Shown in pieces: positions 6,595 to 63,794 of a stretch of 64,000 nt of DNA. Numbering within the stretch: the stretch's first letter is position 1; every line of letters starts with the position of its first letter. The notes under the pieces are model-generated. The model had not been told where the DNA came from. It made no database searches and worked only from the letters and a program-made list of their open reading frames with translations. Origin of the DNA: Macrostomum lignano (taxonomy: Eukaryota); the NCBI GenBank assembly GCA_002269645.1, contig NIVC01001194.1, positions 1-64,000 on the forward strand, written 5' to 3'. A program made the position numbers and the translations under genes.

Positions 6595-9500
6595 TTATCT
6601 GCTCACGTAGCCTTCGGGAGCTTCAATGCTGCCAGCTGACGAAGGGTCCTCCTGATGCAGAAGCGACTGCGCTGTGTCATAGGGCAGCCCAGCCGAAAGA
6701 AGCTGGAATGTTGAGGAAAGGTGTGTACATTTGGGTGGTGGGGGAGGTGTTACATTGGGGTGGTAGGGGAGGTGTGCACGTTGGGGTGGTAGGGGAGGTG
6801 TGTACATTGGGGTGTAATGGAGGTGTGCACATTGGGGTGGTGGGGGAGGTGTGTGTACATTGGGGTGGTGGGGAGGTGTTACATTGGGGTGGTAGGGGAG
6901 GTGTGCACATTGGGGTGGAAGGGGAGGTGTGTACATTGGGGTGGTAAGGGAGGTGTGCACATTGGGGTGGTGGGGGAGGTGTGTGTACATTGGGGTGGTA
7001 AGGGAGGTGTGCACATTGGGGTGGTGGGGGAGGTGTGTGTACATTGGGGTGGTAGGGGAGGTGTTATATTTGGGTGGTGGAGGAGGTGTGTACATAGGGG
7101 TGGTGGGGGAGGTGTGTACATTGGGGTGGTGGGGGAGGTGTGCACATTGGGTGGTGGGGGAGGTGTGTACATTGGGTGGTAAGGGAGGTGTGCACATTGG
7201 GGTGGTGGGGGAGGTGTGTGTACATTGGGTGGTAAGGGAGGTGTGCACATTGGGGTGGTGGAGGAGGTGTGTACATAGGGGTGGTGGGGGAGGTGTGTAC
7301 ATTGGGTGGTGGGGGAGGTGTGCACATTGGGGTGGTGGGGGAGGTGTGTACATTGGGGTGGTAAGGGAGGTGTGCACATTGGGGTGGTGGGGGAGGTGTG
7401 TGTACATTGGGGTGGTAAGGGAGGTGTGTACATTGGGGTGGTGGGGGAGGTGTGTACATTGGGGTGGTAGGGGAGGTGTGTACATTGGGGTGGTAAGGGA
7501 GGTGTGTACATAGGGGTGGTGGGGGTGTGTACATTGGGGTGGTGGGGGAGGTGTTACATTGGGGTGGTAGGGGAGGTGTGCACGTTGGGGTGGTAGGGGA
7601 GGTGTGTACATTGGGGTGTAATGGAGGTGTGCACATTGGGGTGGTGGGGGAGGTGTGTGTACATTGGGGTGGTAGGGGAGGTGTGCACGTTGGGGTGGTA
7701 GGGGAGGTGTGTACATTGGGGTGTAATGGAGGTGTGCACATTGGGGTGGTGGGGGAGGTGTGCACATTGGGGTGGTGGGGAGGTGTTACATTGGGGTGGT
7801 AGGGGAGGTGTGCACATTGGGGTGGTAGGGGAGGTGTGTACATTGGGGTGGTAAGGGAGGTGTGCACATTGGGGTGGTGGGGGAGGTGTGTGTACATTGG
7901 GGTGGTAAGGGAGGTGTGCACATTGGGGTGGTGGGGGAGGTGTGTGTACATTGGGGTGGTAGGGGAGGTGTGTGTACATTGGGGTGGTAGGGGAGGTGTG
8001 TACATTGGGGTGGTAAGGGAGGTGTGTACATTGGGGTGGTGGGGGAGGTGTGTACATTGGGGTGGCGGGGGAGGTGTGTACATTGGGTGGTAAGGGAGGT
8101 GTGTACATTGGGGTGGTGGGGAGGTGTGTACATTGGGGTGGCGGGGAGGTGTGTACATTGGGGTGGTAGGGGAGGTGTGTACATTGGGGTGGTAAGGGAG
8201 GTGTGTACATAGGGGTGGTGGGGGTGTGTACATTGGGGTGGTAGGGGAGGTGTGCACATTGGGGTGGTAGGGGAGGCGTTTGGGGTGGTAAGGGAGGTGG
8301 GCACATTGGGGTGGTGGGGGAGGTGTGTGTATATTGGGGTGGTAGGGGAGGTGTGTACATTAGGGTGGTGAGGTGTGTTTACATTGGGGTGGTAGGGGAG
8401 GTGTGTACAATGGGGGCGGCAAGGCAAGTATGTACATTGACAACCAGTCAGTATGCTAAAACTGGCTACATAAACTTCATAGCCATGAATTTAAAAGCAA
8501 CTCACCGTTGCGTCGGGTTCAGAAATGTACTTTTGTGGGTCAGACAATGGCACTGCTTCAGCTCGACGCCGCATTGTCCAGCGTCTAACAGCCATAGCAA
8601 CGCCAATTGCAGAGACAATTAAAATTGAACCTACAACAAGCAGAACCAGACGCCAGGATGAAAAACTGGATGAACCTTCAGCCGTTGCAAAAGCAGAAAC
8701 AGGCAAAACTGGACACGCAACACCTCTGCGAATTTGCCAGGTGTCTTTGGAAAATCCTCGATTACCGGTCACGTGACCAGACCGGTTGCAGTCTGCGATA
8801 AAGTTTGTTGAGTTCACCAGGCAGCTGACAAATGTCTGACTGTCAGAGCCACCTGAGCAAGCAGCTGTCAAAGGTGGCAGGTGAATTAAACGATTTGGCA
8901 AACTTGAATTCTCGCCGTAAGATGTGGAGGCGAAGATTGCCAAAGTCGATTCGAACTCGAGGCTGAGCATGGAGGAGTTGAGGACAATGCTGAGATATGA
9001 GGCTGTTGAGAATTTGTCAGAAACAGCCAGCGTTTCACTCTGATTGGTGCCGAGGTTTGCGACTCTGTAGAGCAGGATTCGGCCGTTCCTGCAGCGCCTG
9101 TGCGATTTTGAAGGGGCGATTCTAGAGAGGCGATTCTGAAGAGGCGATTTCAAAATGTAATTTGTGAAAAAGCAAAAAGATGGGAATATCGAAAATAATT
9201 TGTGGGACCAATTGACCACAAATCCTGTAATTTACAGCAGATGATGAAGTTGCAAAAAAACGAAAGCGCTCTCTCACCTGTCGGAGGCTGGGAACACCAG
9301 CTGGCTGGGAGGCAGCAGAAATGCCTCATCAAGCTCCGGGTTGCATGGCAGCCACTCCCCTGATCTGCCGCTACCGCTCGAGTTGTCGCTCCAGTGGCCG
9401 CTGAAGTGCCGCGGTCTGCAGCGGACGGTCACCGAGTACTTCGTGTCGGGACTGACTGCAACGGAGACGGCTGTGGAGTTGGTTGCCAGGCTGCGGCCGT

Positions 9501-12500
9501 CAGACAGAAGCACCTGGTAGCTGTACTCCTGGTTGCCAGGCAACGGTGAGCTTGGTGCCGTCCAGCTGATGTTGAGCTGCTGGGGCTCAAAGTGGAGGGC
9601 CAGCTTCCTGACGGGGCCGGGCTTCTCTGGAATGCATTTGGAGTGATCCCGGTTATGACTGAGTGATCCCGGTGATGACTGAGTGATCCCGGTGATGACT
9701 GAGTCATCCCAGTGCTACCTGAATGATCCCAGTGCTACCTGAATGATCCCAGTGCTGCCTGAATGATCCCAGTGCTACCTGAATGATCCCAGTGCTACCT
9801 GAATGATCGCAGTGCTACCTGAATGATCCCAGTGCTACCTGAATGATCCCAGTGCTAACTTATAAAAGGTCCCTAAGGCATGAGCAACTTACCTTTGTCT
9901 CTAAGGTCAAACACAGAAGACTCATTAACACACCAGCCCAGCTGATTGCACAAGCTCAGAGTCAGCCGGACAATGTCAGGCCCATACTCAGATGACTGGT
10001 GAATCATGCCAAATTCGCAGTAACCAGAGCTGTCGCAGGTGCAGCTGCAATCGGCCTCTTTGCGGGACAAACTGCGAAAATTTATGGAAAAAAAGTTGCT
10101 ATTGTTACTGATTCAGATTGTGCCCTCACTTTATTGTAAGAAAGGCAAAAGTAACAGGAAATATGCATTGAGTAATCAGAAGTAAAGCCAACATTCAGGA
10201 GGAGAGGTATGACAGATTAGCTGAGAGATAATTATTCATAAAAGTAACCGCTTTATCCTTAAAGTGCATTGGAACCTTTAACTGCAGTATCAATATTTAC
10301 AGTGGCGTAGACACTGAGGATCTGGGAGGCTGGCCGAGCAACTGAGGATCTGGAAGGCTGGCCCAGCAACTGAGGATCTGGGAGGCTGGCCCAGCAACTG
10401 AGGATCTGGGAGGCTGGCCCAGCAACTGAGGATCTGGGAGGCAGGCCCAGCAACTGAGGATCTGGGAGGCAGGCCCAGCAACTGAGGATCTGGGAGGCTT
10501 GCCCAGCAACTGAGGATCTGGGAGGCTGGTGGCCCAGCAACTGAGGATCTGGGAGGCAGGCCCAGCAACTGAGGATCTGGGAGGCAGGCCCAGCAACTGA
10601 GGATCTGGGAGGCTTGCCCAGCAACTGAGGATCTGGGAGGCTGGTGGCCCAGCAACTGAGGATCTGGGAGGCTGGTCGAGCAACTGAGGATCTTGGAGGC
10701 TGGTGGCCCAGCAACTGAGGATCTGGGAGGCTGGTGGCCCAGCAACTGAGGATCTGGGAGGCTGGTGGCCCAGCAACTGAGGATCTGGGAGGCTGGTGGC
10801 CCAGCAACTGAGGATCTGGGAGGCTGGCCCAGCAACTGAGGATCTGGGAGGCTGCATAGCAACTGAGGATCTGGGAGGCTGCATAGCAACTGAGGATCTT
10901 GGAGTTTGGCAGTGACCTAGCAACTGAGGGTTTGGGAAAAAAGGCAGTTTTTAATCTTCATCGAATTTAATAAAAATGATTTAGAGTTTGAAACGATAAG
11001 GCATACGGTTTTAAGTAACATGAAAACATAAAAAATTACATACATTTACGTACAGAACACCATAAATAACACACATGACAAAAAAAGCGTGCATCGTTAC
11101 ATATAACACCCATAAATGAATTTTATAAACAAATCGAAATGCCATAACGATAACGATAATAAATAAGCCAAACTATCTATGCTTAACCAACTAGTAAACG
11201 TGATGACATACCTCAGATGCACTGAAAGCACATTATTTGCTTCTGCTCAAACTTCAGCATCAGAACCCGACTACAAACAGGCGTTTAGAATAGCAAAAAA
11301 ATAAATGCCATAATTTATAAATCAATTAAGAGCCTCGTGCAACAGAAAAGCTACAAAAGGCGATTTTAAAAGTGGCAAACTAAGATAAAACAAATACATA
11401 CTACTATAAATAGGGGAAATCAGTAGTATATAGAGAGGACACAGACTGCAAAAATGATATAAAGAACAATCTATAAAGAGTAAATCAGAAACATCGATAC
11501 AACAGCTACCTGACATCATCATTAGTAAAGAAGAGATCTGGCGATGCAGCTGGTTGACATGCCGAGCAGATCTCATCCAATCGAATGATCTGCGTTCTGC
11601 AGGTTAATTCAGTTTCTCTGGTCTAAGTTTAGGAGTTGCTGAGTGCGTGTCACCCTTGGTGCTGGCGCCCCTTGGTGCTGGCGCCCCTTGGTGCTGGGCG
11701 CCCCTTGGTGCTGGCGCCCCTTGGTGCTGGCGCCCCTTGGTGCTGGCGCCCCTTGGTGCTGGCGCCCCTTGGTGCTGGCGCCCCTTGGTGCTGGCGCCCC
11801 TTGGTGCTGGCGCCCCTTGGTGCTGGCGCCCCTTGGTGACTCTATTTTACAGCAAAACTAAATTTACCAAATAACTGAATAATCGCTAAAACTATATGGT
11901 GGATTTCTAACAAAATGGTGTCTATTATAGGATTGCACAGTCTCAACAAGCAAACTGAACTCACAACTGCAGCACGCCCACAGCCAGAGTCAGTCGGCCT
12001 CCAAGACTCGGCGGGACACCTGTGGAGTTGGCGATCGCCGGCAGGCTGGGCCGCACAACCAGAGTGGCGTAGCGCCGGTCCTGCCAGAAGAAATCCACTG
12101 CGGTCGGGACTGGGAGCGCTGGGGGATGGGGAGTGAGGGCGACTGATGAAGCAGCCTGTGCAAGTATGCAGCTGTGCTTCAGTTTCAGCAGATATGACAA
12201 AAGTTTTAAGACAATAGATTTTAAAATCCAATATCCCCCGTTGCTGGGCCAGCCTCCCAGACCCCCAGTTGCTGGGCCAGCCTCCCAGATCCCCAGTTGC
12301 TGGGCCACCAGCCTCCCAGACCCCTAGTTGCTGTGCCAACCTCCCAGATCCCCAGTTGCTGGGCCACCAGCCTCCCAGATCCTCAGTTGCTGGGCCATCA
12401 GCCTCCCAGATCCCTAGTTGCTGGGCCAGCCTTCCAGATCCTCAGTTGCTGGGCCAGCCTTCCAGATCCTCAGTTGCTGGGCCAGCCTCCCAGATCCTCA

Positions 12501-13802
12501 GTTGCTGGGCCACCAGCCTCCCAGATCCTCAGTTGCTGGGCCACCAGCCTCCCAGATCCCTAGTTGCTGGGCCAGCCTTCCAGATCCCCAGTTGCTGGGC
12601 CACCAGCCTCCCAGATCCTCAGTTGCTGGGCCAGCCTCCCAGATCGTCAGTTGCTGGGCCACCAGCCTCCCAGATCCTCAGTTGCTGGGCCACCAGCCTC
12701 CCAGATCCTCAGTTGCTGGGCCACCAGCCTCCCAGATCCCTAGTTGCTGGGCCAGCCTTCCAGATCCTCAGTTGCTGGGCCACCAGCCTCCCAGATCCTC
12801 AGTTGCTGGGCCACCAGCCTCCCAGATCCTCAGTTGCTGGGCCACCAGCCTCCCAGATCCCTAGTTGCTGGGCCAGCCTCCCAGACCCCCAGTTGCTGGG
12901 CCAGCCTCCCAGATCCCCAGTTGCTGGGCCACCAGCCTCCCAGACCCCTAGTTGCTGTGCCAACCTCCCAGATCCCCAGTTGCTGGGCCACCAGCCTCCC
13001 AGATCCTCAGTTGCTGGGCCATCAGCCTCCCAGATCCCTAGTTGCTGGGCCAGCCTTCCAGATCCTTAGTTGCTGGGCCAGCCTTCCAGATCCTCAGTTG
13101 CTGGGCCAGCCTCCCAGATCCTCAGTTGCTGGGCCACCAGCCTCCCAGATCCTCAGTTGCTGGGCCACCAGCCTCCCAGATCCCTAGTTGCTGGGCCAGC
13201 CTTCCAGATCCCCAGTTGCTGGGCCAGCCTCCCAGATCCTCAGTTGCTGGGTCAGCCTCACAGATCCCCAGTTGCTGGGCCATGATGTACACCAAAGCAC
13301 ACCAGAAGCCGTCACTCACATCCCACAGTGAGCTGAGTCGCCTCGCTCATCACCAGAGGCCGCCCACTGCTGTCCCGGCAACCGCACCGGTACCAGCCGC
13401 TGTGCCGGCTAACGCTGACGTTGGCAAAATGAAAAGCAGCAACGCTAGAATTGCGCCACAGCTGTGGCAGAAACGTCATCTTGGTTGAGTCCGATGGGTC
13501 CTGGTTGAATAGCAAACGGACTTGGTCCAGTGGAGTGCTGTTAACAAGAGCTTGCAGTTGCTTCTGATAGTGGCAGAAAAATGTTACATTGCTGCTTTCT
13601 AGAAGCACTTTGTCTGCTGGACTTTGCTCCAGAACTGTGGGAAAAGTTGGTGCATTTAAAGTGTTAAAAATACATCAAACTGAGTTGCTATCAGTTAATA
13701 CTTCAGAGTCTCACCAAACACTGCTGGAAGCTGAGCTGCAGCAGCCACCATCAGACCCGTCAGCAGAGTTGCTGCTGTCAGGCCAGCCCCACCGATCAGC
13801 AT
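6595..13802 (-). CDS. Class I cytokine receptor-like protein A (gp130/Domeless-like: signal peptide, Ig, cytokine-binding module, FN3, TM, short tail), ~602 aa
   Basis: Exons 13802-13715 (signal MLIGGAGLTAATLLTGLMVAAAA), 13634-13320 (Ig: VTFFC...SGWYRCGC...LTVG), 12142-11965, 10071-9893 (CNQLGW...FDLRDK), 9626-9278 (EKPGPVRKL...[16 protein letters not shown]), 9097-8506 (NGRILLYRV FN3; TM LVLLVVGSILIVSAIGVAMAV) and 6702-6595. Phases are consistent. From recalled gp130 sequence, the motifs parallel NALG...KPNPPHNL, IRC...GYWSDWS and NGKILDYEV. A possible extra last exon lies at 5469-5365. Confidence 0.75.
6720..8420. repeat. G-rich 25-28-bp intronic minisatellite (acattggggtggtaggggaggtgtgt)n
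   Basis: 1.7-kb array in the last intron of receptor A. It produces the spurious Pro/His/Thr-rich ORFs. Confidence 0.95.
9650..9860. repeat. 20-bp minisatellite (tgaatgatcccagtgctacc)n
   Basis: Fills intron 9627-9892 of receptor A. Confidence 0.95.
10313..10930. repeat. 28-31-bp minisatellite (cagcaactgaggatctgggaggctggtggcc)n, left arm of an inverted pair
   Basis: The unit is the reverse complement of the array at 12235-13282. Confidence 0.95.
11655..11838. repeat. 16-bp minisatellite (ggtgctggcgcccctt)n
   Basis: About 11 near-perfect units. Confidence 0.95.
12235..13282. repeat. 28-31-bp minisatellite (gttgctgggccaccagcctcccagatcctca)n, right arm of an inverted pair
   Basis: Reverse complement of the 10313-10930 unit. 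Confidence 0.95.
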
Positions 13803-13894
13803 GGCAACAAACACTGCTGCTTGTTGATACTGGCTGCAATTTTGTTATAATCAGTATATATGATAATAGCTCAGTTGCTTGATTTTCAACTATT

Positions 13895-14175
13895 AATAAT
13901 AAAAATAATCGATTACCCCTGCCCCAATTGGGCCAGATGTGCAACCGACAGCTCAGCCGCAGCTATTGCGCGGCGCATCTGAAAGCTGCGTACGGCTGTT
14001 CAGTCCAAGGACTGGGGGAGGGGGGGGGTCGCCACACACCCTCAATTACCCCAGCTAATGCTGGCACCCATTTTACAGCTGGGTGAACTGAAGCAATGCA
14101 GAGTTATAAGTGTCTTGCTCAGGGGACACAGATTGTTCCTAGTGGGATCGGGAATCGAACCCCCTCGCTACAACC
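13895..14175 (-). mobile_element. 5'-truncated tRNA-derived CORE-type SINE remnant
   Basis: The minus strand has a Pol III B-box (GGTTCGATTCCC) followed by ctgtgtcccctgagcaagacactt...cttcagttcacccagctgtaaaatggg. This resembles the MIR CORE (ctgtgtgaccttgggcaagttactt...ctcagtttcctcatctgtaaaatggg). It ends in an A/T-rich tail. Confidence 0.7.
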
Positions 14176-14677
14176 CCCTGGAGAAGAATATTCCTTCAAC
14201 GGAATTCCCCACAAGAAGAATTTCCAAGAACCGCCGAATTTTTCTGTAAAGAAGAACTTTTCTATTGGGAATTCCTTTTCAGAGAAGAATTCTCCTGCAT
14301 CGGTATGAGTAAAGTATTTAAAAAGCGACTCTAAAACGAGTAGATGTCAAGGTACAAGTTGCCCCAGAATCATGCACATTGAGGCGTCTTAATGTCTTCT
14401 GCGACTCTAAAACAGCTCGGGAGCGACAGTATAACGACTATGGGGGCGTAGTGTCCACAGTAAAGTTGCGTTTGAACCACTAACTAGCTTACTGAGTAAG
14501 TAGAAAGTTAAGCGTCAACACAACGATTCTTGGGCAACTCTTTTAAGATTCTAAGTTAAAAAAGGGGGGGGCATCACAAACCCTAATAATCACAACTCCA
14601 AAAAGCGCTTTCCATCATAAACCCGAAATATCATAAACCCAAAATTGATAGCAATGTCCAACACTATTTTGGTTTTC

Positions 14678-15210
14678 GGAGTTATGATATTTCGGTTTTA
14701 TGAAGGGCGTTGCTAACACTTTCGGAGTTATGATATTTCGGTTTTATGAAGGGCGTTGCTAACACTTTCGGAGTTATGATATTTCGGTTTTATGAAGGGC
14801 GTTGCTAACACTTTCGGAGTTATGATATTTCGGTTTTATGAAGGGCGTTGCTAACACTTTCGGAGTTATGATATTTCGGTTTTATGATGGGCGTTGCGAA
14901 CACTTTCGGAGTTATGATATTTCGGTTTTATGAAGGGCGTTGCTAACACTTTCGGAGTTATGATATTTCGGGTTTATGAAGGGCGTTGCTAACACTTTCG
15001 GAGTTATGATATTTCGGGTTTATGAAGGGCGTTGCTAACACTTTCGGAGTTATGATATTTCGGGTTTATGAAGGGCGTTGCTAACACTTTCGGAGTTATG
15101 ATATTTCGGTTTTATGAAGGGCGTTGCTAACACTTTCGGAGTTATGATATTTCGGTTTTATGAAGGGCGTTGCTAACACTTTCGGAGTTATGATATTTCG
15201 GTTTTGTGAT
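14678..15210. repeat. 46-bp minisatellite (ttcggagttatgatatttcggttttatgaagggcgttgctaacact)n
   Basis: About 11-12 near-identical units. An inverted partial unit lies at ~14615-14645. Confidence 0.95.
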
Positions 15211-15717
15211 GGCGACCCTTAAAAGTCGCAAGAATCCGAGCCCGAGAGTTGCAATGATTTTTTAGCGATTCTTGTTTTCAACGGGTCCGCTCATTACGCT
15301 GATCCCTGGGCCCTTTTTAGACTTTCTAATCGTCAGGCATGTACACTCTCCGTGTCTTATGGGGGTTGGGCTAATTTTCGTGAATCGAACCTGGGGGGGG
15401 GGGAATCTCTGCTTCCCTGCCCCACCCTATCCTTAGCTTTTACAGTAAGCTCAGAAAGAAAATATGAACACAAAAAGACATTTCTGGAAGGAAAAATGCT
15501 TTAAAAATGTATATTGAAGAACTATCAAACCGGAACCATAATAAAAAAGAGTAAATAAAAAGTCAGACTAGAGTGTAAAATATACATGTAAACTTTAGGA
15601 AGAAAAGTTATTGAGCAACAATAAAAGGGGAGGATAAAAAAGAACCCATAAAAAAGTTAAGTACACAGAGTACTCTATAAATTTGAACACTGAAAAAAAT
15701 CGATCAATTCGATATCG

Positions 15718-18700
15718 CTAGAAGCACTGGGACCGGCTGCTGTATCCCGGTTCGACTGTGGTGGTGCAATCAGCAGCGGTAGACTCAGTCTGCTGACTGG
15801 CAGCTGGTGTCTCTGATGTCGCAAATTGATGAGCAACTGACATGGCAGACTTCGGCCAACTGGCTGCATTGTGAGTGTTTTGAGTTTCGTTGCTGTCAGC
15901 GGCTGCAGCAGATGGGGGCCAAGAGTAGCTCTGCTCTGCCATCAGCATCTGTTGGCAGGCATTGGGTGTGGGTAAATAATTCCCTTACTATTAGACAAGC
16001 AATTAATTCTCTAATCCAAATAAACAGGTAAATAATTCCCCTCTGCAGTTACATTAGGGGCGGTAGCGGATGTGTACATTGGGGGCGGCAGGGGAGGTGT
16101 GTACATTGGGGGTGGCAGGGGAGGTGTGTACATTGGGGTGGCAGGGGAGGTGTGTACATTGGGGTGGCAGGGGAGGTGTGTACATTGGGGGTGGCAGGGG
16201 AGGTGTGTACATTGGGGGTGGCAGGGGAGGTGTGTACATTGGGGGTGGTAGGGGAGGTGTGTACAATGGGGGTGGCAAGGCAAGTATGTACATTGACAAC
16301 CAGTCAGTATGCTAAACCCGGCTACATAAACTTCATAACCATGATTTGAAAAGCGACTCACCGTTGCGTCGGGTTCAGAAATGTACTTTTGTGGGTCAGA
16401 CTTTGGCACTGCTTGAGCCTGACGCCGCATTTTCAAACGTCTAACAGCCATAGCAACGCCAACGACAATTAAAACTGAAACTGCTAAAAGAACCAGATGC
16501 CAGGATAAAAAACCGGATGAACCTTCAGTCGTTGCAAAAGCAGACACAGGCAAAACTGGACACGCAACACCTCTGCGAATTTGCCAGGTGTTTTTGGCAA
16601 ATCCTCGATTCTGATGATTGGCTACAGATGACGTCACCGGCTTGGTCACGTGACCAGACCGGTTGCAGTCTGCGATAAAGTTTGTTGAGTTCATCAGGCA
16701 GCTGACAAATGTCTGACTGTCCGAACCACCTGAGCAAGCAGCTGTCAAAGGTGGCAGGTGAATTAAACGATTTGGCAAACTTGAATTCTCGCCGTAAGAT
16801 GTGGAGGCGAAGATTGCCAAAGTTGACTCAAACTCGAGGCTGAGCATGGAGGAGTTGAGAACAATGCTGAGATATGAGGCTGTTGAGAATTTGTCAGAAA
16901 CAGCCAGCGTTTCACTCTGATTGGTGCCGAGGTTTGCGACTCTGTAGAGCAGGACTCGGCCGTTCCTGCAGCTCCTGCGGCGATTTTAAAGGGCGATTTT
17001 TACAAACAATTCTGAAGAGGCGATTCTGCAGAGGCGATTCTGAAGAGGCGATTTTGAAGAGCCGATTCTGAAGAGGCGATTCTGCAGAGGCGATTCTGAA
17101 GAGGCGATTTTGAAGAGGCGATTCTGAAGGGGCGATTCTGCAGAGGCGATTCTGAAGAGGCGATTTTGAAGAGGCGATTTTAACGAGGCGATTTTGAGGA
17201 GGCGATTCTGCAGAGGCGATTCTGAAGAGGCGATTCTGAAGAGGCGATTCTGCAGAGGCGATTCTGAAGAGGCGATTCTGCAGAGGCGATTCTGAAGAGG
17301 CGATTCTGAAGAGGCGATTCTGAAGAAGTGATTTTTAAGTAGCGTTTAAAAAGAGGCCATTCCGAAAAAGCGATTTTAAGATGCGATTCTGAAGAGGCAA
17401 TTCTGAAGAGGCGATTTCAAAATGTAATTTGTGAAAAAGCTAAAAGATGGGAACTTCGAAAATAATTTGTGGGACTACCGGTAATCGATCACCTATCCTG
17501 TAATTTACAGCAGATGATGAAGTTGCAAAAAAACGAAAGCGCTCTCTCACCTGTCGGAGGCTGGGAACAACAGCTGGCTGGGAGGCAGCAGAAATGCCTC
17601 ATCAAGCTCCGGGTTGCATGGCAGCCACTCCCCTGATCTGCCGCTACCGCTCGAGTTGTCGCTCCAGTGGCCGCTGAAGTGCCGCGGTCTGCAGCGGACG
17701 GTCACCGAGTACTTCGTGTCGGGACTGACTGCAACGGAGACGGCTGTGGAGTTGGTTGCGAGGCTGCGGCCGTCAGACAGAAGCACCTGGTAGCTGTACT
17801 CCTGGTTGCCAGGCAACGGTGAGCTTGGTGCCGTCCAGCTGATGTTGAGCTGCTGGGGCTCAAAGTGGAGGGCCAGCTTCTTGACGGGGCTGGGCTTCTC
17901 TGGAATGCATTTGGAGTGATCCCGGTTATGACTGAGTGATCCCGGTGCTACCTGAATGATCCCAGTGCTACCTGAATGATCCCAGTGCTGCCTGAATGAT
18001 CCCAGTGCTACCTGAATGATCCCAGTGCTACCTGAATGATCCCAGTGCTACCTGAATGATCCCAGTGCTACCTGAATGATCCCAGTGCTGCCTGAATGAT
18101 CCCAGTGCTACCTGAATGATCCCAGTGCTACCTGACTGATCCCAGTGCTACCTGAATGATCCCAGTGCTACCTGAATGATCGCAGTGCTACCTGAATGAT
18201 CCCAGTGCTGCCTGAATGATCTCACATCTACCTAACAATAAAATCTATGCAATAATCGCAAAAGCCAAACTTATGGAACACCTTTATCTCACCTTTATCG
18301 CGCAAATCAAACTCATACAGCTGAGTGCTGCACCATTGCAGCTGATTGCACAGTGTCAGAGTCACATTGACCCGATATTTAAATATGTACACAGAGCTCT
18401 GAGCCAGCTCCAAGCCCCAGTCGCAGACACCTGTCCTGTCATTGTAATTATCGCAATCGCCCTGCTTATCTCTGCAATTTGAGTCGCTTTGTACAGTCAG
18501 TTTGGTCTATGGCAGAAAGCACTACATCTGCAAAGTGGCTCTGACTTACCCCAGATAATAATGGAGCCGTATTGAGACTGAACCGCCCAGCTCAGGCGGA
18601 ACTCCACTGGCATTGGCGATGAAGGATGGGGCCGGGTGAATTTTTGAACTCAAAACTTTTCGGTCTAGCCAATAGAAACTGAGGTTCGCAGCGCGAGGCT

Positions 18701-18954
18701 TTGCTGGAAACATCGAAGGATAATGCGCTCGGGTATTTAAATATGCGAGCTTTGTTGCCAGCTCTGCTTTTGTATGCCTTGTGCGAATGTCTGCGTGCGA
18801 TTCTGTCATGCTGTAGCTGTCCCAGGATTTGCGATAGACAGACAACTGGTGTCAGCTCTGGTTGCCTTAGTGTCTGTCTTTCTGTCTTTCTGCCTGTCTG
18901 CCTGTGTGCCTGTCTATCTCTCTGTCTGTCTGTCTGTATTAGTGTTTGTCTGTG

Positions 18955-18989
<35 letters not shown>

Positions 18990-19142
18990 GCGTGTGTCTG
19001 TCTGTCTGTCTGTCTGTCTGTCTTAGTGTCTGTCTGTCTTTCTGTCTGTCAGTTTGTCTCTGTCTGTGTGTCTGTCTGTCTGTCTGTGCGTGTGTCTGTC
19101 TGTCTGTCTGTCTTAGTGTTTGTCTATGTGTCTGTCTGTCTG

Positions 19143-19200
<58 letters not shown>

Positions 19201-20026
19201 GCGTGTGTCTGTCTGTCTGTCTGTCTGTCTGTATTAGTGTTTGTCTGTGTGTCTTTCTGTCTGGTCTGTCTGTCTGTCTGTGCGTGTGTCTGTCTGTCTG
19301 TCTGGTCTGGTCTGGTTTGTCTGTCTGTCTGTCTTAGTGTCTAGTGTCTGTCTGTCCGTCCGTCCGTCTGTATGTCTACCTGTCTGCCTGTCTGTCTGTG
19401 TGAGTGTCTGAGTGTCTTTCTGTCTACCAGTCAAACTGCCTACCTACCTATCTAGCTGGCTGTCTGCCTACCTACCTAACTACCTACCTATCCGTCTATC
19501 TGACTTTCTTCAACTGTCTGTCTGTTTTAGCGTTTGTTTTTTAGTATGTCTGTCTATCTGTCTTCCAAACCCGTCACTCACAGCCAACCAAAAGTCTGGT
19601 GGGGTGACTCAAAACCCACAGCCGATTTGTAGAGACGTTCGCAGAGTCAGCGGCAGTAAAAGTGCAGCCGCACCAATACCAGCCGGTGTAGCCGCCGAAT
19701 GTGCTCACATTGCTGAGCAGAAAACTCGCTAAAGAATGATTCCGGCATGAGTGATTTATCATCAGCAGCTCAGTAGTGCTGGCAGATTGCCAATCAGATC
19801 TCCTCGGTGAGTACAGCAGAGTCAAATTCGAGCATCGCTGATTGGCTGCTGCTTGGCCGGAGCATTGAAAAGTGACGTCACTGCCAGCTTGAAGCACGTG
19901 GCTGCCGTTTGGCCATATATTTGGCCTTAAAAAATCATTGGAGACTGAGGAATATTCTTCCAATTTAGCACTGAGCAGTGGGAGCAAAACTAATCCGATA
20001 ATTGCCGGCCAGATCGAGGCGAGCAT
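15718..20026 (-). CDS. Class I cytokine receptor-like protein B (gp130/Domeless-like), ~685 aa
   Basis: Exons 20026-19582 (signal [20 protein letters not shown] plus Ig VTFQC...YTGWYWCGC...LLVG), 18790-18550 (FPAKP..NLS), 18471-18293, 17899-17551 (GHWSDNS), 16974-16362 (FN3, TM) and 15948-15718 (TAG). Total 2058 nt with consistent phases 1,2,1,2,0. Confidence 0.78.
16070..16290. repeat. G-rich minisatellite, short counterpart of 6720-8420
   Basis: Unit ggggtggcaggggaggtgtgtacatt, in the equivalent intron of receptor B. Confidence 0.9.
17010..17415. repeat. 14-bp minisatellite (gaagaggcgattct)n
   Basis: Expanded in receptor B. Only about 2-3 units occur at the equivalent site in receptor A (~9110-9150). 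Confidence 0.9.
17915..18220. repeat. 20-bp minisatellite (tgaatgatcccagtgctacc)n
   Basis: Intron of receptor B, equivalent to 9650-9860. Confidence 0.95.
18840..19560. repeat. (GTCT)n-type compound microsatellite
   Basis: Imperfect tetranucleotide runs in intron 1 of receptor B. Confidence 0.95.
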
Positions 20027-20134
20027 TCGTGGGGAGGCTGGAAAAGTGACGAATTAGAAGCATTGGCTGCGGATTGCAGTGCCCTGCTGGCCTAATAATA
20101 ACTACATAAATATAGTAGCTCTTATTACGAGCGT

Positions 20135-20189
20135 AGTAACAGTAGTAGTAGTAGTAGTAGTAGTAGCAGTAGTAAGTAGTAGTAGTAAT

Positions 20190-20222
<33 letters not shown>

Positions 20223-20229
20223 CAGTAGT

Positions 20230-20266
<37 letters not shown>

Positions 20267-20330
20267 CGCAGCAGCAGTAGTAGCAGTAGTAGTACTAGTA
20301 GTAGTAGTAGTAGTAACAGTAGTAGTATTA
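20135..20330. repeat. (TAG)n microsatellite
   Basis: Directly visible. Confidence 0.95.
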
Positions 20331-22288
20331 CAAGTACCTAGCCGGACGCAAAGCGAAAATGAACAAGATATTACATCGTATTAAAACTTTTTTGGAAAGA
20401 AACTTTTTAAGGCAGGCAACTGTGTTTACTTTCTCGCATCAATAGAGCATCTGAGATTAATTATTATAGCCAGCAGCAATCGTAAAAAATCGTTAAGAAG
20501 ATGCAGGTTTTTTATACAGCTTGGGCACGACAATGGCCAGCAGAGTTTTATGTGCCTGCAGAGATTACTATCCAGTTATTTGAATGAATTCGAAAATTAA
20601 CAATAAATAAAGCAAAAACATAAAAAAATACAGATATGCTTTTACACTACTGTCAGTAGTTTTAGCTTAGGGAATAATTATGGCAGGGATAGATCGTGTA
20701 GTTGGGTGTTCCTTATAATTTGTAAAAATGTAAAAAACGTTGTAAAAAACAGCCAAAAATAAATTGTATCCGAATTAGTATAAAAATTTGAATATCGTGA
20801 AATCATTTTGACATCGCGAAATTCGACAATTAAGTATAAAAAATAGCGTGAGCGCTCGAATATAGGGCTGATGCCCATGCCTTAATATATATCAAGTCAA
20901 TATTCTAGTACGTATTATTATATTTCCTCATTTTATCAGATCCCTTCTGTGTGCGGGATTCCCCTTCCGTCTTTTTTTATCCCTAAATTTGCTAAATACT
21001 ACAAAGTATTAACAAAATAGTTTTATTTATTTTTTGATATTCGTATAAATTTTCCGATCGAAATCTTGTAAATATTTTAACTTTATCGATCAAAAAAAGC
21101 AACACTGCGGCAGAGTTCTTCTGAACTGACCCGCGCCGGTTTCGACGGCACCTCGTTTTAACAAAAATGCATAACAATTAAAGTCGGTTTTCAGTCTTAA
21201 ACAGAATTCTAACTTAAAAGAATATAAGGGTAAGATCAATTTGCACCAATAAAAGGAAGAATATTCTAAAAACGATTGTATGCCTATTCCATCATTTTTC
21301 TGTTTTACATATTTTGAGTAAATAAATCTTACGGTTTCCTGTTTTGATTCTTTAATATTTAGTATCGCATATAACATAATAAAATACAATATCTAAATAC
21401 TGTGATTAGCGAATATATCAGGAACCAGGTGGTAGGATTCTACCAACTAAAACAGTAGTCTACTAAAGAGAACTAAGAATTGTAATAACTTCGAAAGGCA
21501 AACTGCAAAGGCTGGCTTGTAGCACGAAACAGTTGGCTCTGCTGAACTGAGAATTGCAGAGATACCGGAAAGGTAGTTGCAATTCCAAAGCAGAGTGGGA
21601 GGCACCTTTATGGCAGTGTATTTGGGGTGGGTACGCCCCGAGCTTCGTAGAGGGAAGGTAGTGGAACGCACATAGACATAGAAAGATACAATGGGGTGAG
21701 TCACACGCAGACAGACAGACAGAGAGATGTCGGAACCAGACAGACACGCAGTGATTCCATTCCATTCCATTCCGAATGGAATAATGAGAAGGTATTGATG
21801 CCTTTGTAGTGAGCCGCTAGTTTATTGTTAGGCGTCGCCCTTTGTCAGCAGTCGCCCTTGCTCTCGCCCCTCTGCGGGTTGCTGTCTGCCGCTGGTCAGC
21901 TTCCCGCTCCCTTGTCTGTCTGCTCCTGTCCCTTTTGATGAAAAAATTCATCTTATTATAACGATATTTGTTGCTGAAGCATGTCATTTTTCGTAACTTC
22001 TAACTAGACCAACTAATAATTATGTCGTCTAGTTGTGAATAATTGATTACGCGAACTTATACAACTTCAAACGATTTACTTGGCGTTTTAAAGTTTGACG
22101 GAGTTAATGACAAAGTTTTAGTCTTACGAGCGGCACTAAAAAAGTTTTGAGCCTGACCAAGATCTTATAGTGGCAAAGTGTTGAAACTTTAGGCTCTAAA
22201 AGTGCCACATGTTAATAGTCTATTGTCAACTATTCAGAATTTTCTGCATTCCCTAAGCCCCACCGCACCATTTTATTTCCAGCACCCC

Positions 22289-23340
22289 ATGGCATTTTCG
22301 TAAGAATTGAAGCTTGAGCACAGGGCAGTGATTAAATTTCTGACTCTGGAGGGCTCAAAGCCTGCTGAAATTCAAAGCCGCATGGCTAGTGTGTACGCTG
22401 ACGCTGCCCCCTCATACGCCACCATCAAGCGCTAGGCAGCCAAGTTCAAGCGTGGCCGCGACTCGCTCGAAGATGACCCCCGATGTGGACGACCCCGGAA
22501 TGCTGTCACCGCCGACAACATCCAGCGCATCCAGGCTCTGGTTGACAGTGACCAGCGGGTGAAAGTCAGGGAACTTGCAGCATACACTAGACTCTCTGAC
22601 CCGCAAGTCATTGAGATCCTGCACCAGCATCTTCATCTGTCGAAGGTTTCTGCCAGATGGATCCCACGAATCTTGACAAGGGACCAAAAGACCGCACGGG
22701 TGCAGTACTCAAAGCTTGTCATGGACTCCTACGATCCGGACCCTGCCAACTTTCTGTCCTGCTGCGTGACCGGGGATGAGACGTGGATCCATCACCACGA
22801 TCCCGAGTCCAAGCAGTGGCTGCCAGTTGGTTCACCTGCACCACTGAAAGCACGGACTGCATGCAGTGCGGGCAAGATTATGCTGACCGTCTTCTGGGAT
22901 GCCAAGGGCCCGCTGCTGCTGGACTTTCTACTGCACAAGCAGACAGTCACAGGCGCCTACTACGCTGACCTGATCGCCCGTCTGCGCGAGGCAATCAAGG
23001 AAAATAGGCGAGGGATGCTGAGCCGAGGTGTTGTGCTGCTGCACAATGCACCGGCCCACACCAGAAGGATTGCCAAGGCTGCTGTCAGTGTCGCAGGGTT
23101 CCGAGAGCTGCCGCACCCGGCCTATTCATCGGACCTGGCCCCGAGCGACTTCCACCTGTTTCCACATCTCAAGCGGGCGCTCCATGGACAGCGATTTGAC
23201 ACTGATGATGCGCTAAAGGATGCTGCAACTGCTTGGTTTGAGGCTGCTCGGTGCAATTCTTCCAGAGTGGCATTGAGGCGCTGCGATCAAGATGCCATAA
23301 GTGCAGCTTGGTTAGGGGAGACTATGTTGAGAAAAGCTGA
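22289..23340 (+). pseudogene. Mariner transposase pseudogene
   Basis: Two in-frame stops in the N-terminal HTH region (MAFS*ELK..., ATIKR*AAK). The second catalytic Asp is missing (LLHNAPAH instead of LLHDNAPAH). Confidence 0.85.
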
Positions 23341-23362
23341 TCTCACTTTGCCCATATCTCCT

Positions 23363-24770
23363 GGGTTAGCGCTACCCAGGTCAAAAGCCATGCAGACCTG
23401 CTCAACACGATCCAAGGCAGAGCGTGTAGGCTCATCTGCAACGCCACCAGGCCCACGCCCTTTGCTGGCATGGGGGCCTTCCTTAATCTTCCGCCTATTG
23501 ACCTCTTCATCAGGGGTGAGGCGGCTAGAACGACGCGGCGTCTAATTGATGCCGGCGTCAAATTCATTTACATGAGAGCACCTGCTAAGCGGAACCTTGT
23601 CCCGCATAGCGATCTGTGCCTCAACTTTCTCAACGAGTGTCAGGCCAATCGCGTTTTCACCGATGGCATTGCCTCAACGCTCAACCTGAGACAGCGCTAC
23701 TCCGTAGCTATCGACTCGCGCGATAACATCAATGACCAATGGAACCCTGGTGAGCTTCATTGCTACACCGACGGTTCTAAGCAGTCAGCCAACACCGGCT
23801 TTGGTGTTGGAATCTTTCTGAACGGGAGGGTCATCGCTACCCACGCTCAATACACTGGGGTCAACTCCAGTGTTTTCCAAAATGAAGTTCTGGCCATCAG
23901 CTCCTGCACTGCAGAGCTTCTCGCCACTGGCGTTACTGGTAAGAACATCATTTTCCATTCGGACAGCCAAGCTGCCTTGCACGCCATCAGTGGCTGCAGC
24001 ACCAACTCTGCTACAGTCCTCGACTGTATCAAACTCCTCAACGTGTTGGGTTCCGCCAACACAATTACCCTTAAGTGGGTTCCGGGGCATGTGGGGATCC
24101 GAGGAAATGAGTTGGCTGACACCCTTGCAAAAGTTGGTGCCTCCGGCTCCTCTCTCGGCCCCGAACCTCTTGTCCCGATTCCTGGCTGTGTCATCGACTC
24201 GCGCATCAAAGCGTGGATCAGGACTCAGCACCGCTCGACTTGGGCGAACCGCACGAACTGCAGGCAATCCAGAGGCGCTGTCCCTCAGCCCTCTCACCAG
24301 CTCCGGAAGCTCCTCTTGCGCCTCTCACGCAGAGACATCCGGGCTGCCATCATGACCCTCTCTGGTCACGGCTGCTTCTCCAGGCACCAGTACCTGCAGG
24401 GCAACGCCACCAACGCCACCTGTAGTTTCTGCAACTCAGGTGACGAAACCGCTGAGCATTTCGTCAGCATCTGTCCCGCCTTCACGCGGGCCAGACTCAC
24501 TTACCTCGGGCCACACACATCTATTACTGAAGCGTGCAAACCCGAAAACTTTAATCAGCTCATGCGTTACCTTCGGGCCACCCGCAGGGCTGAACTCTCC
24601 TTTCCAGAGAGCACCATAGCTGCTGGCGACACTGGGGGACCTCCCTGGGCGGCGCCAACCCTCCGTCCATAGCGACGCGTCGGCCGTTCAGGGACTAGCG
24701 GAATGGGCGCCCGCGCCTTGCCACTGTGTCCCCTCCGGGACAGCCCTGCAGCTAAGTCAAGTAAGTCAAG
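23363..24770 (+). mobile_element. 5'-truncated non-LTR retrotransposon (LINE with RNase H; I/R1/LOA-type group)
   Basis: 14-bp TSD tgcccatatctcct at 23349-23362 and 24771-24784. The open frame has a post-RT region, RNase H (YTDGSK, SVFQNE, HSDSQAAL, WVPGHVGIRGNELAD) and a CCHC knuckle (CSFCNSGDETAEHFVSIC). The tail is short tandem (taagtcaag)n. Confidence 0.92.
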
Positions 24771-31042: not shown

Positions 31043-31377
31043 CGCAGAGGATTTTATTTTTTTTCTCGTTTCTGAATCGCGTTTATACGTCTTCACTTGT
31101 GTGCGCTGGGTATGCTTTGCGACTGGAATGATGCCAGATTTTTACAAGAGATGCAAGTGAGTTTCTGTCTGTTAGATGAGGTTACCCAGTCTTTTTTAAG
31201 ACTTGATTGATCTGAAGCAGCAGTTCGGGGTGTTAGTCTCAAGCAACAAATTCACTATTGTATTTTTAAGAGTATGCGAAATGCGTTTTAACTTTGGGCC
31301 TGTGCCACCGCTTTCCTAAGCTTTTTTGTACATCTTTTCATAATTAAAAAACCTTTAATGTTGTTTGTGTGCTGTTG

Positions 31378-63737: not shown

Positions 63738-63794
63738 CTGTCAGACTCTGGTGTGAAAGTACGCTTTCTACCTGAGACCATTCACTGCTTATCA

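What the first reader, a model, noticed from the sequence alone, without database searches (positions are those of the whole stretch)
6595..20026. Tandem pair of gp130/Domeless-like class I cytokine receptors hidden among satellite-filled introns
Seen: two complete multi-exon genes with signal peptide, Ig domain ending L.VG, a Cys-containing D2 (CNQL[G/Q]W...FDLRDK), D3 with VRC...GHWSDNS, one further FN3, a TM helix and 60-100-aa tails with conserved Tyr (KYISEP, and GY[V/S]SR). Known: this order and these motifs parallel gp130 (WSxWS, preceded by RC). Invertebrate members are best known from arthropod Domeless and its adjacent truncated paralogue Latran/Eye transformer. Here WSxWS is altered to WSDNS, there are fewer membrane-proximal FN3 domains than in gp130, and the Box1 Pro motif is degenerate (AVP[L/K]SDP). 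Inference: a little-studied cytokine-type receptor system in a probable flatworm, possibly a heterodimer or a receptor/decoy pair.
Basis: partly seen in the sequence, partly recalled or inferred. Interest (0 to 1): 0.8.

Follow-up and report, generated by a model that had tools for sequence, protein, structure and literature searches.

The report
Flatworm gp130-like receptor gene pair
Two neighbouring genes of the flatworm Macrostomum lignano encode membrane receptors whose outer part most resembles the gp130 and leptin-receptor type of cytokine receptor, a receptor class not so far described in flatworms, but several hallmark motifs are missing and no signalling partner is known.

Summary
On the minus strand of 6595-20026 lie two complete genes with canonical GT-AG splicing, gene A (7 exons, 591 aa) and gene B (6 exons, 656 aa). 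About two thirds of their intron sequence is satellite DNA.

The DNA is Macrostomum lignano. The only sequence relatives among 1.8 billion representative proteins are M. lignano paralogues and generic bacterial FN3 repeats.

A three-paralogue profile searched against all PDB sequences hits only gp130 (E 3.6e-6) and IL-12 p40 in its first 22 places. The D3 profile hits both WSXWS domains of the leptin receptor (E 2e-6). hhalign against gp130 gives 94% probability over 190 collinear columns (D2 C-half, D3, start of D4). A reversed-sequence control hits nothing.

The canonical signatures are incomplete:
- the first CHD disulfide and its C-x-W are absent;
- WSXWS reads WSDNS, and YDSDP in the third paralogue;
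- there is no PxxPxP Box1 and no YxxQ.

Structure prediction failed.

The two genes are a mosaic. Ig-D2 and the tail exons are old and diverged, while D3 to TM were homogenised by gene conversion.

Verdict: divergent gp130-like receptors, probability about 0.6. Cytokine-type signalling is untested.

The parts
19582..20026 (-). Gene B exon 1: signal peptide ([20 protein letters not shown]|K) plus the Ig domain, ending LLVG. Phase-1 donor GTGAGT.
   Evidence: The Ig profile hits LILR, VEGFR and FGFR Ig domains (E 3e-5).
18550..18703 (-). Gene B exon 2: N-terminal half of D2 ([16 protein letters not shown]...RLHYYLG).
   Evidence: Present in public model P0001.
18293..18471 (-). Gene B exon 3: C-terminal half of D2, with C-x9-C ([14 protein letters not shown]), CNQLQWC and FDLRDK.
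   Evidence: HMMER aligns C-x9-C onto gp130 ADCKAKRDTPTSC; hhalign agrees.
17551..17899 (-). Gene B exon 4: D3 FN3 domain with [18 protein letters not shown], plus the first strand of D4.
   Evidence: Pfam fn3 E 1e-4, below threshold. The D3 profile hits the leptin-receptor WSXWS domains at E 2.3e-6.
16362..16974 (-). Gene B exon 5: rest of D4 ([11 protein letters not shown]...), a Cys-containing stalk, the TM helix (aa 531-553) and the juxtamembrane segment [27 protein letters not shown].
   Evidence: The start of D4 aligns with gp130 D4 (and the longer gp130 chains).
15718..15948 (-). Gene B exon 6: cytoplasmic tail ending ...[11 protein letters not shown]. This is my prediction; no public model contains it.
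   Evidence: It is 99.6% identical in L001, where the surrounding DNA is 96% identical.
13715..13802 (-). Gene A exon 1: signal peptide MLIGGAGLTAATLLTGLMVAAAAQLPAVF. Phase-1 donor GTGAGA.
   Evidence: The exon 1-2 join AVF|VLEQSP is present in public model P0009.
13320..13634 (-). Gene A exon 2: Ig domain ending LTVG.
11965..12109 (-). Gene A exon 3: N-terminal half of D2 (FPTAVDFFWQDRRYATL...). Flanked by inverted arrays of one satellite.
9893..10071 (-). Gene A exon 4: C-terminal half of D2 (DCSCTCDSSGYCEFG...CNQLGWC...FDLRDK).
9278..9626 (-). Gene A exon 5: D3 (WSDNS) plus the start of D4. D3 is 98% identical in protein to gene B's D3.
8506..9097 (-). Gene A exon 6: D4, Cys stalk, TM (aa 504-529) and the juxtamembrane segment [17 protein letters not shown].
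6595..6702 (-). Gene A exon 7: tail LLSAGLPYDTAQ...EAPEGYVSR*.
   Evidence: Present in P0001 and P0003.
8206..9860 (-). Gene-conversion tract in gene A, covering exons 5-6 with the intron between them and parts of the flanking introns. It is 87-95% identical in DNA to 16050-18133 in gene B.
   Evidence: dS is 0.016-0.07 inside the tract and saturated outside it.
16050..18133 (-). The matching gene-conversion tract in gene B.

Best explanation
These are two tandemly duplicated Macrostomum lignano genes. Each encodes a glycosylated type I membrane receptor whose ectodomain is a very divergent homologue of the 'tall' gp130/leptin-receptor class of class I cytokine receptors. The domain order is: signal peptide, Ig domain, a two-domain cytokine-receptor-homology module (D2 and D3), one further FN3-like domain (D4), a Cys-containing stalk, a TM helix, and a short tail of 62 or 103 aa.

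Shown:
- the gene structures;
- purifying selection on both genes;
- specific profile similarity of D2(C-half)-D3-D4(start) to gp130, LEPR and IL-12 p40, including retention of the second CHD disulfide (C-x9-C) and a WSXWS-position motif, G-H-W-S-D-N-S, after V-R-C-R;
- the mosaic history. Ig-D2 and the last tail exon are old and diverged. D3, D4, the stalk and the TM were homogenised by gene conversion.

Inferred:
- each chain binds a secreted protein ligand through its paralogue-specific Ig-D2 face and the D2-D3 elbow;
- ligand binding drives homo- or heterodimerisation, which the shared D3-D4-stalk-TM would favour;
- the signal passes through the shared juxtamembrane AVPxSDPxKY segment and three conserved tail tyrosines (KYISEP, a middle Y, and GY[V/S]SR), by recruiting a cytoplasmic kinase or a longer signalling co-receptor.

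Because the tails are short and lack Box1 and YxxQ, an alpha-chain-like (ligand-capturing) role is as likely as autonomous JAK/STAT signalling.
For: - Gene models with GT-AG sites and consistent phases.
- All exons and splice sites are kept in a second copy of the locus, without stop codons, with pN/pS 0.27 and 0.35.
- A versus B dN/dS is 0.25-0.33 in Ig and D2.
- Single-sequence phmmer against PDB returns gp130 only (E 0.07).
- The three-paralogue profile against PDB gives gp130 (E 3.6e-6 to 2e-5) and IL-12 p40 (1.2e-4) in the first 22 places. The first non-cytokine hit is ROBO2 at 0.005. The alignment runs from the C-x9-C, laid on gp130 C-KAKRDTPTS-C, through the linker to WSxWS.
- For chain 1bqu, the gp130 score falls from 29.5 bits (D2+D3) to 14 bits (D3 alone), so D2 contributes to the match.
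- The D3 profile hits both WSXWS domains of the leptin receptor (E 2.3e-6; [19 protein letters not shown] against [19 protein letters not shown]), then p40, OSMR, gp130 and PRLR.
- hhalign against gp130 D2-D4 gives 93.8% probability and E 1.7e-7 over 190 collinear columns reaching CRNGRxxxYxV in D4.
- The reversed-profile control gives 0 hits at E<=10.
- The Ig domain is confirmed, with a weak LIF-R_Ig-like Pfam hit (E 0.004).
- The Ig-CHD-FBN-TM topology matches the dome/gp130 archetype as described in PMC1963337.
Against: - The literal CHD motif CX9-10CXWX26-32CX10-15C is absent. There is no first disulfide, and the only CX9CXW lies where the second pair belongs.
- WSXWS lacks its second W. 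In paralogue P0005 the motif is YDSDP.
- The D2-only profile and the D4-only profile hit nothing in PDB.
- Pfam sees only sub-threshold fn3.
- An exhaustive HMMER scan of 1.84 billion representatives finds no cytokine receptor at E<1e-3. The best hits outside M. lignano are bacterial FN3/cadherin repeat proteins carrying a generic 'G.G.WSDSGSG'.
- Both AlphaFold runs failed (pLDDT 40 and 32), so there is no fold evidence.
- The tails have no PxxPxP Box1 and no YxxQ.
- One survey reports JAK and STAT as not detected in Platyhelminthes (PMC13203501). That text is internally inconsistent, and a planarian STAT has been reported (PMC8797187).
Confidence: 0.6

Rival explanations
1. These are lineage-specific Ig-FN3 surface glycoproteins, for example adhesion or recognition molecules. 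Their resemblance to cytokine receptors reflects generic FN3 features plus chance or convergent motifs (R-C-R ... G-x-W-S). They do not bind helical cytokines or engage JAK-type kinases.
For: - The canonical Cys motif, WSXWS, Box1 and YxxQ all fail.
- D2 alone and D4 alone have no detectable relatives.
- The strongest hits outside M. lignano in the exhaustive search are bacterial FN3 repeats with a similar 'WSDSGSGRT'.
- The WS motif is not conserved in paralogue P0005.
- Monobody, ROBO2 and neogenin FN3 domains appear among the weaker PDB hits.
Against: - PDB holds very many non-cytokine FN3 chains, yet the top 22 places (D2-D3 profile) and top 5 places (D3 profile) are all class I cytokine receptors.
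- The match is collinear across three domains and includes an aligned disulfide.
- One N-terminal Ig domain followed by a CHR-like pair is the gp130 and IL-6R-alpha plan, not the multi-Ig plus multi-FN3 plan of adhesion molecules.
Confidence: 0.3
2. The pair works like Drosophila Domeless and Latran: one gene is the signalling receptor, and the other is a short non-signalling decoy that heterodimerises with it and damps signalling.
For: - The two genes are adjacent, on the same strand, and arose by duplication, as dome and lat did (PMC2914635).
- The tails differ in length (62 against 103 aa) and their last exons are diverged.
- The near-identical D3-D4-stalk-TM could favour heteromer formation.
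Against: - Neither protein is truncated. Both keep Ig, D2, D3, D4, TM, the same juxtamembrane segment and three aligned tail tyrosines. Latran lacks the FN3 domains and the STAT site.
- Neither tail has a STAT-type YxxQ, so no 'signalling' partner can be singled out.
- Both are under purifying selection in the ligand-binding half, which points instead to two different ligand specificities.
Confidence: 0.1
3. The reading frames are decaying duplicates (pseudogenes), or artefacts of assembly or prediction in a satellite-rich, highly duplicated genome.
For: - The public models of the locus are inconsistent and chimeric (P0001, P0002, P0003, P0009).
- No transcript data could be examined.
- Gene B's last exon is my prediction only.
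Against: - There are 13 exons with canonical splice sites and no stop or frameshift, in two independent copies of the locus.
- pN/pS is 0.27-0.35 between copies and dN/dS is 0.25-0.33 between paralogues.
- No exon base overlaps a tandem repeat.
Confidence: 0.03

Closest known systems
Human gp130 (IL6ST), the 'tall' group 2 class I cytokine receptor
   Same: - It has the same order of N-terminal Ig, two-domain CHR, FN3 and TM.
- It is the best PDB match of the family profile (E 3.6e-6) and gives hhalign 94% over 190 columns.
- The second CHD disulfide (C-x9-C), the D2-D3 linker (K-P-x-P), the F-strand R-C-R and the G-x-W-S-D-x-S are aligned, and so is the 'NG+I..Y.V' motif of the next FN3.
   Different: - The flatworm proteins have no first CHD disulfide or C-x-W.
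- WSDNS replaces WSDWS.
- There is one FN3-like domain plus a Cys-rich stalk, instead of three FN3 domains.
- The tail is 62-103 aa instead of about 277 aa (gp130 figure from my own knowledge) and has no Box1 PxxPxP, Box2 or YxxQ.
- Sequence identity is only about 28% in the aligned part.
Leptin receptor (LEPR), CRH1 and CRH2 membrane-proximal domains
   Same: It is the best match of D3 alone (E 2.3e-6). Both WSXWS-bearing domains align, including VxVRCR....G.WS.xSS.
   Different: - LEPR has duplicated CHRs and a different overall layout.
- Only D3 matches.
- The second W of the motif is missing in the flatworm proteins.
IL-12 p40, and the IL-6R-alpha-type (group 3) Ig+CHR chains
   Same: - They have Ig plus CHR with little or no cytoplasmic signalling capacity.
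- p40 is the second-best family in both profile searches.
- The short tails of genes A and B fit a ligand-capturing alpha-chain role (group 3 definition in PMC1963337).
   Different: - p40 is secreted, whereas A and B have a TM helix and conserved tail tyrosines.
- A and B carry an extra D4 and stalk.
Drosophila Domeless and Latran (Eye transformer)
   Same: - It is an invertebrate gp130-related receptor gene with an adjacent same-strand paralogue (PMC2914635).
- Its CBM motifs are degenerate (this point is from my own knowledge).
   Different: - No sequence comparison with Dome could be run here.
- Latran is a truncated decoy without FN3 domains, whereas genes A and B have equal architectures.
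- Dome's CHD is a single exon (PMC1963337). Here D2 is split into two exons, and D3 shares an exon with the start of D4.

Membership tests
Class I cytokine receptor (CHD-containing) | Two tandem FN3-type domains form the roughly 200-aa cytokine receptor homology domain. | tested here: inconclusive
   - D3 is an FN3 domain (Pfam fn3 E 1e-4, below threshold; specific PDB hits).
- The C-terminal half of D2 aligns with gp130 D2, but the D2-only profile finds nothing.
- Both AlphaFold models were unusable.
Class I cytokine receptor (CHD-containing) | The motif CX(9-10)CXWX(26-32)CX(10-15)C, two disulfides in the first domain (PMC1963337). | tested here: not met
   - The regex is absent in A, B, P0001 and P0005.
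- Only one pair, C-x9-C, is aligned, and it falls on gp130's second disulfide.
- An extra C-x5-C lies in the region that aligns with the last two strands of gp130 D2.
- The first pair and its C-x-W are missing.
Class I cytokine receptor (CHD-containing) | A WSXWS motif at the C-terminal end of the second domain. | tested here: not met
   - A and B have WSDNS. It sits at the right position and is preceded by VRCR, but the second W is N.
- Paralogue P0005 has YDSDP.
- The family definition allows variants, as in GHR, so this is a partial failure.
Class I cytokine receptor (signalling chains) | A membrane-proximal Box1 (proline-rich) and a Box2 for JAK docking. | tested here: not met
   There is no PxxPxP in either tail. 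Only AVP[L/K]SDP is present, 10 residues after the TM. JAK binding cannot be tested with these tools.
gp130 / Dome archetype (group 2) | The topology Ig - CHD - FN3 module(s) - TM - Box1. | tested here: inconclusive
   - The Ig domain is confirmed.
- The CHD-like pair and the start of one FN3 align collinearly with gp130.
- There is only one FN3-like domain and no clear Box1.
gp130 / Dome archetype (group 2) | STAT docking tyrosines (YxxQ) in the tail. | tested here: not met
   Neither cytoplasmic tail has a YxxQ. The tail tyrosines are in YISE, YDTA/YSWP and YVSR/YSSR.
Dome/Latran-type receptor plus decoy pair | An adjacent paralogue that is truncated: no FN3 domains, a short tail and no STAT site. 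| tested here: not met
   The genes are adjacent and on the same strand, but both proteins have the full architecture (definition).
Multi-Ig/multi-FN3 adhesion receptors (Robo, DCC, NCAM type) | Several N-terminal Ig domains followed by several canonical FN3 domains, with best similarity to those families. | tested here: not met
   There is a single Ig domain. The best adhesion-type hit (ROBO2) has E 0.005 and ranks behind 22 cytokine-receptor entries.

The most novel reading that the evidence does not exclude
Flatworms retain a gp130/Dome-type cytokine receptor lineage. It would have diverged so far (first CHD disulfide lost, WSXWS and Box1 degenerate, short tails) that homology surveys have missed it. 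In Macrostomum it would have expanded into at least three paralogue types. In the tandem pair, conversion keeps one shared 'chassis' (D3, D4, stalk, TM), while the ligand-binding heads and signalling tails diverge. This would be a cytokine-like signalling axis, possibly coupled to a non-canonical kinase, in a regeneration model where no such axis is described.
Probability: 0.3. Interest if true: 0.75.

Novelty: new variant of a known kind. Interest (0 to 1): 0.55.

Why it matters
Surveys of cytokine-receptor, JAK and STAT evolution either leave flatworms out or report the components as not detected there (PMC13203501; no flatworm is mentioned in PMC3296744). I found no paper linking M. lignano to cytokine receptors. 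The public records call these proteins 'hypothetical', 'Fibronectin type-III domain-containing' or even 'Cadherin domain-containing'.

If these proteins really are gp130-type receptors, three things follow:
- The ancestral bilaterian receptor was not lost in Platyhelminthes.
- There is a concrete entry point (RNAi, in situ hybridisation, a ligand hunt) for studying cytokine-like signalling in a stem-cell and regeneration model.
- They show how far the CHD signatures can erode.

The mosaic pattern is also a neat case of domain-selective concerted evolution in a receptor pair: conversion is confined to D3 through TM, while the heads and tails diverge.

Tried and rejected
I used the public model P0001 instead. 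It turned out to be a chimera of the other copy's gene B exons 1-4 with that copy's gene A exons 6-7.
- AlphaFold. P0001 alone gave pLDDT 40. With the only available MSA of 5 M. lignano sequences it gave pLDDT 32. Both models are unusable, so I ran no Foldseek search, because matches would be meaningless.
- Word-indexed homology searches with gene B and with P0005 returned only M. lignano proteins.
- The exhaustive HMMER scan added only one true paralogue (P0005) and bacterial FN3 repeat proteins.
- Pfam shows only sub-threshold fn3, Ig_3 and LIF-R_Ig-like.
- The D2-only and D4+stalk profiles hit nothing in PDB.
- Looking up P0005's locus found no record.
- Literature searches on JAK/STAT in flatworms or Macrostomum gave nothing decisive.
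- I ran no further search on JAK or STAT. Hits cannot be filtered by species, so an M. lignano orthologue would be buried.
- I first took [14 protein letters not shown] (CX9CXW) for the first CHD disulfide. I rejected this because only about 40 residues follow it before D3. Both HMMER and hhalign place it on gp130's second disulfide.
- I guessed that the ORF at 25836-27239 was Mab-21-like. Pfam shows no hit.
Full report
**Observation**

The interval 6595-20026 holds two genes on the minus strand. I located the exon fragments by six-frame translation, read the splice sites directly, and assembled two uninterrupted coding sequences with canonical GT-AG introns and consistent phases.

- Gene A has 7 exons and encodes 591 aa: 13802-13715, 13634-13320, 12109-11965, 10071-9893, 9626-9278, 9097-8506, 6702-6595.
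- Gene B has 6 exons and encodes 656 aa: 20026-19582, 18703-18550, 18471-18293, 17899-17551, 16974-16362, 15948-15718.

One exon per gene encodes the N-terminal half of D2. Gene A's signal peptide lies on a separate 88-nt exon. D3 shares its exon with the first strand of the next domain.

Tandem repeats (periods 4, 14, 16, 20, 26-31 and 59 nt) cover 69% of gene A's intron bases, 64% of gene B's, and no exon base. 'Hidden among satellite-filled introns' is accurate.

**Organism and relatives**

A search with gene B found only three proteins, all from the free-living flatworm Macrostomum lignano. An exhaustive HMMER scan of 1.84 billion representative proteins with the public model P0001 found:

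- fragments of the same genes;
- one real paralogue, P0005 (760 aa, 32% identity over the matched stretches), which is also M. lignano;
- giant bacterial FN3/cadherin-repeat proteins that share a generic 'SYQVQVRATN..G.G.WSDSGSGRT' with D3.

No cytokine receptor reached E<1e-3 at that database size. By ordinary sequence search, then, the family is confined to Macrostomum. Part of the 'WSDNS' resemblance is generic to FN3 domains.

**Are the genes real?**

A second M. lignano copy of the locus exists: L001, GCA_002269645.1 contig NIVC01001685.1, 92-98% identical in DNA. It keeps both genes in tandem. All 13 exons and their AG/GT sites are intact, the only indel is in frame, and there are no stop codons. 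Between the two copies pN/pS is 0.27 for gene A and 0.35 for gene B.

The public protein models of the locus are inconsistent. P0001 joins the exons 1-4 of L001's gene B to the exons 6-7 of its gene A. P0009 joins gene B 3' pieces to gene A 5' exons. P0002 is mispredicted at its 3' end. Even so, they independently contain most of my junctions. Gene B's last exon is my prediction only. It is 99.6% identical in L001, against about 96% for the surrounding DNA.

**Mosaic history of the pair**

A and B differ in a striking pattern.

| Region | Protein identity | dS | dN/dS |
|---|---|---|---|
| Ig | 31% | saturated | 0.25 |
| D2 | 42% | saturated | 0.33 |
| D3, D4, stalk | 93-98% | 0.016-0.07 | 0.24-0.65 |
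| TM and juxtamembrane | 78% | 0.17 | 0.72 |
| Last tail exon | 40% | saturated | 0.14 |

In the D3-to-TM region the introns are also 87-95% identical (8206-9860 against 16050-18133). The simplest reading is an old duplication followed by an internal gene-conversion tract. The tract keeps a common D3-D4-stalk-TM 'chassis', while the N-terminal head and the distal tail evolve separately under purifying selection.

**What the protein is**

The deduced plan is:

- a signal peptide;
- an Ig domain, with its Cys pair 63-64 residues apart and a G-W-Y-x-C motif; its profile hits LILR, VEGFR and FGFR Ig domains at E 3e-5, with a weak Pfam LIF-R_Ig-like hit at E 0.004;
- D2, about 110 aa on two exons;
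- D3, an FN3 domain;
- D4;
- a stalk of about 80 aa with four cysteines;
- a TM helix;
- a tail of 62 aa (A) or 103 aa (B).

There are 14 to 18 N-glycosylation sequons.

The key test was a search against all PDB sequences.

- Gene B alone returned only gp130 (E 0.07).
- A profile of the three paralogues' ectodomains returned gp130 in the first ten places (E 3.6e-6 to 2e-5). IL-12 p40 (1.2e-4) and further gp130 entries followed, so all 22 first places are class I cytokine receptors. The first other protein, ROBO2, has E 0.005. Prolactin and leptin receptors follow further down.
- The alignment runs from the C-x9-C of D2, laid exactly on gp130's ADCKAKRDTPTSC (the second CHD disulfide), through the last two D2 strands and the K-P-x-P linker, to the F strand and the WSxWS position of D3. 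The longer gp130 chains extend the alignment into D4.
- With D3 alone, the best hits are both WSXWS-bearing domains of the leptin receptor (E 2.3e-6). The match is '[20 protein letters not shown]' against '[19 protein letters not shown]'. IL-12 p40, OSMR, gp130 and PRLR follow.
- For gp130 chain 1bqu the score falls from 29.5 bits (D2+D3) to 14 bits (D3 only), so D2 contributes to the match.
- hhalign of the family profile against gp130 D2-D4 gives 93.8% probability and E 1.7e-7 over 190 collinear columns, reaching '[11 protein letters not shown]' against 'EANGKILDYEV' in D4. The stretch covered by the alignments (up to ...YEDRPSKAP) agrees with what HMMER printed there. The D4 part rests on memory.
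- A reversed-sequence control profile gave no hit at E<=10.

**What does not fit**

The literal definition of the family (PMC1963337) is not met.

- The CX9-10CXWX26-32CX10-15C motif is absent. There is no first disulfide and no C-x-W in place.
- WSXWS reads WSDNS in A and B and YDSDP in P0005.
- The tails have no PxxPxP Box1, no recognisable Box2 and no YxxQ.
- Profiles of D2 alone and of D4+stalk alone find nothing.
- Pfam reports only sub-threshold fn3.
- Both AlphaFold runs failed (pLDDT 40 and 32), so I could not test the fold and did not run Foldseek.
- Whether M. lignano has a JAK, a STAT or a helical cytokine could not be tested with these tools. One survey reports JAK and STAT as not detected in Platyhelminthes, though its text is inconsistent (PMC13203501). 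A planarian STAT has been reported (PMC8797187).

**Most likely function**

I conclude, with about 0.6 confidence, that A and B are very divergent homologues of the gp130/LEPR-type class I cytokine receptors.

Shown: gene structure, selective constraint, domain order, specific profile similarity, and the conversion mosaic.

Inferred:
- ligand binding through the paralogue-specific Ig-D2 face and the D2-D3 elbow;
- dimerisation, homo- or hetero-, plausibly favoured by the identical D3-D4-stalk-TM;
- signalling through the shared juxtamembrane AVPxSDPxKYISEP segment and three aligned tail tyrosines. The last of these lies in G-Y-[V/S]-S-R, and P0005 carries a similar G-Y-S-P-R.

The short tails without Box1 or YxxQ make an alpha-chain-like role as plausible as autonomous JAK/STAT signalling. 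In that role they would capture ligand and need a longer co-receptor.

The main rival (about 0.3) is a lineage-specific Ig-FN3 surface protein with no cytokine-type function. A Dome/Latran-like receptor/decoy relation (about 0.1) gets no support. Neither protein is truncated, and both keep the same juxtamembrane segment and tyrosines. Pseudogenes or artefacts are unlikely (about 0.03).

**Novelty**

I found no paper connecting M. lignano with cytokine receptors. The public names of these proteins are 'hypothetical protein', 'Fibronectin type-III domain-containing protein' and 'Cadherin domain-containing protein'.

Because defining motifs were tested and not met, I do not file the proteins as plain members of the family. 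I rate them a new variant of a known kind: gp130-like in architecture and profile similarity, with eroded signatures, a reduced membrane-proximal region and a short tail, in a phylum where this receptor class is undescribed.

Interest is moderate to fairly high for cytokine-receptor evolution and for flatworm regeneration biology. It is limited by the missing structural and pathway evidence.

Noticed in passing
window 10313-10904 and 12233-13282: The same 28-31-nt satellite lies in opposite orientations in the two introns that flank gene A's D2a exon (12109-11965). The inverted arms reach 181 nt at 96% complementarity. In the pre-mRNA this could loop out the exon, causing exon skipping or back-splicing. 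Gene B has no equivalent arrangement.
   Followed up: partly
window 8206-9860 vs 16050-18133: The same satellite families sit in the equivalent introns of both genes: a 20-nt CTGAATGATCCCAGTGCTAC array before the D3 exon, a 14-nt ATTCTGAAGAGGCG array after it (48 nt in A, 408 nt in B), and a 26/27-nt G-rich array in the last intron (1.7 kb in A, 246 nt in B). The arrays were therefore copied with the conversion tract and then changed in length.
   Followed up: partly
L001 (GCA_002269645.1 NIVC01001685.1) 10001-21819: The public gene model BOX15_Mlig031173g2 (P0001) spans both genes of the homologous locus. It joins that copy's gene B exons 1-4 to its gene A exons 6-7. UniProt-derived models P0009 and P0002 are also chimeric or mispredicted. 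No public model has the correct two-gene structure.
   Followed up: yes
window 27965-31096 (-): A single uninterrupted 1043-aa ORF consists almost entirely of ankyrin repeats (Pfam Ank_2 E 2e-199). It is apparently an intronless gene, next to a 467-aa ORF (25836-27239, minus strand) with no Pfam match.
   Followed up: partly
window 22559-24672 and 41063-41917: There are mariner/DDE-type transposase ORFs (22559-23545 and 41063-41917) and an RNase H-containing ORF (23470-24672, probably a retroelement fragment). L001 aligns with the window only up to about 23362 and again from about 24771.
   Followed up: partly
window 37035-42859 (-) and 49479-63900 (-): The neighbouring multi-exon genes are an FKBP-type isomerase gene (FKBP_C, E 5e-6) and a PI3/PI4-kinase gene (PI3_PI4_kinase, E 4.5e-29, probably PI4K-alpha). 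Their introns are also full of satellites.
   Followed up: partly
window 32020-37211: About 5 kb of a long tandem array with strong A-over-T skew (0.32-0.39) gives long artificial ORFs ('ITQNRSGSHRIGQ...'). Similar arrays lie at 59252-61231 and 1355-2302. I did not examine them.
   Followed up: no
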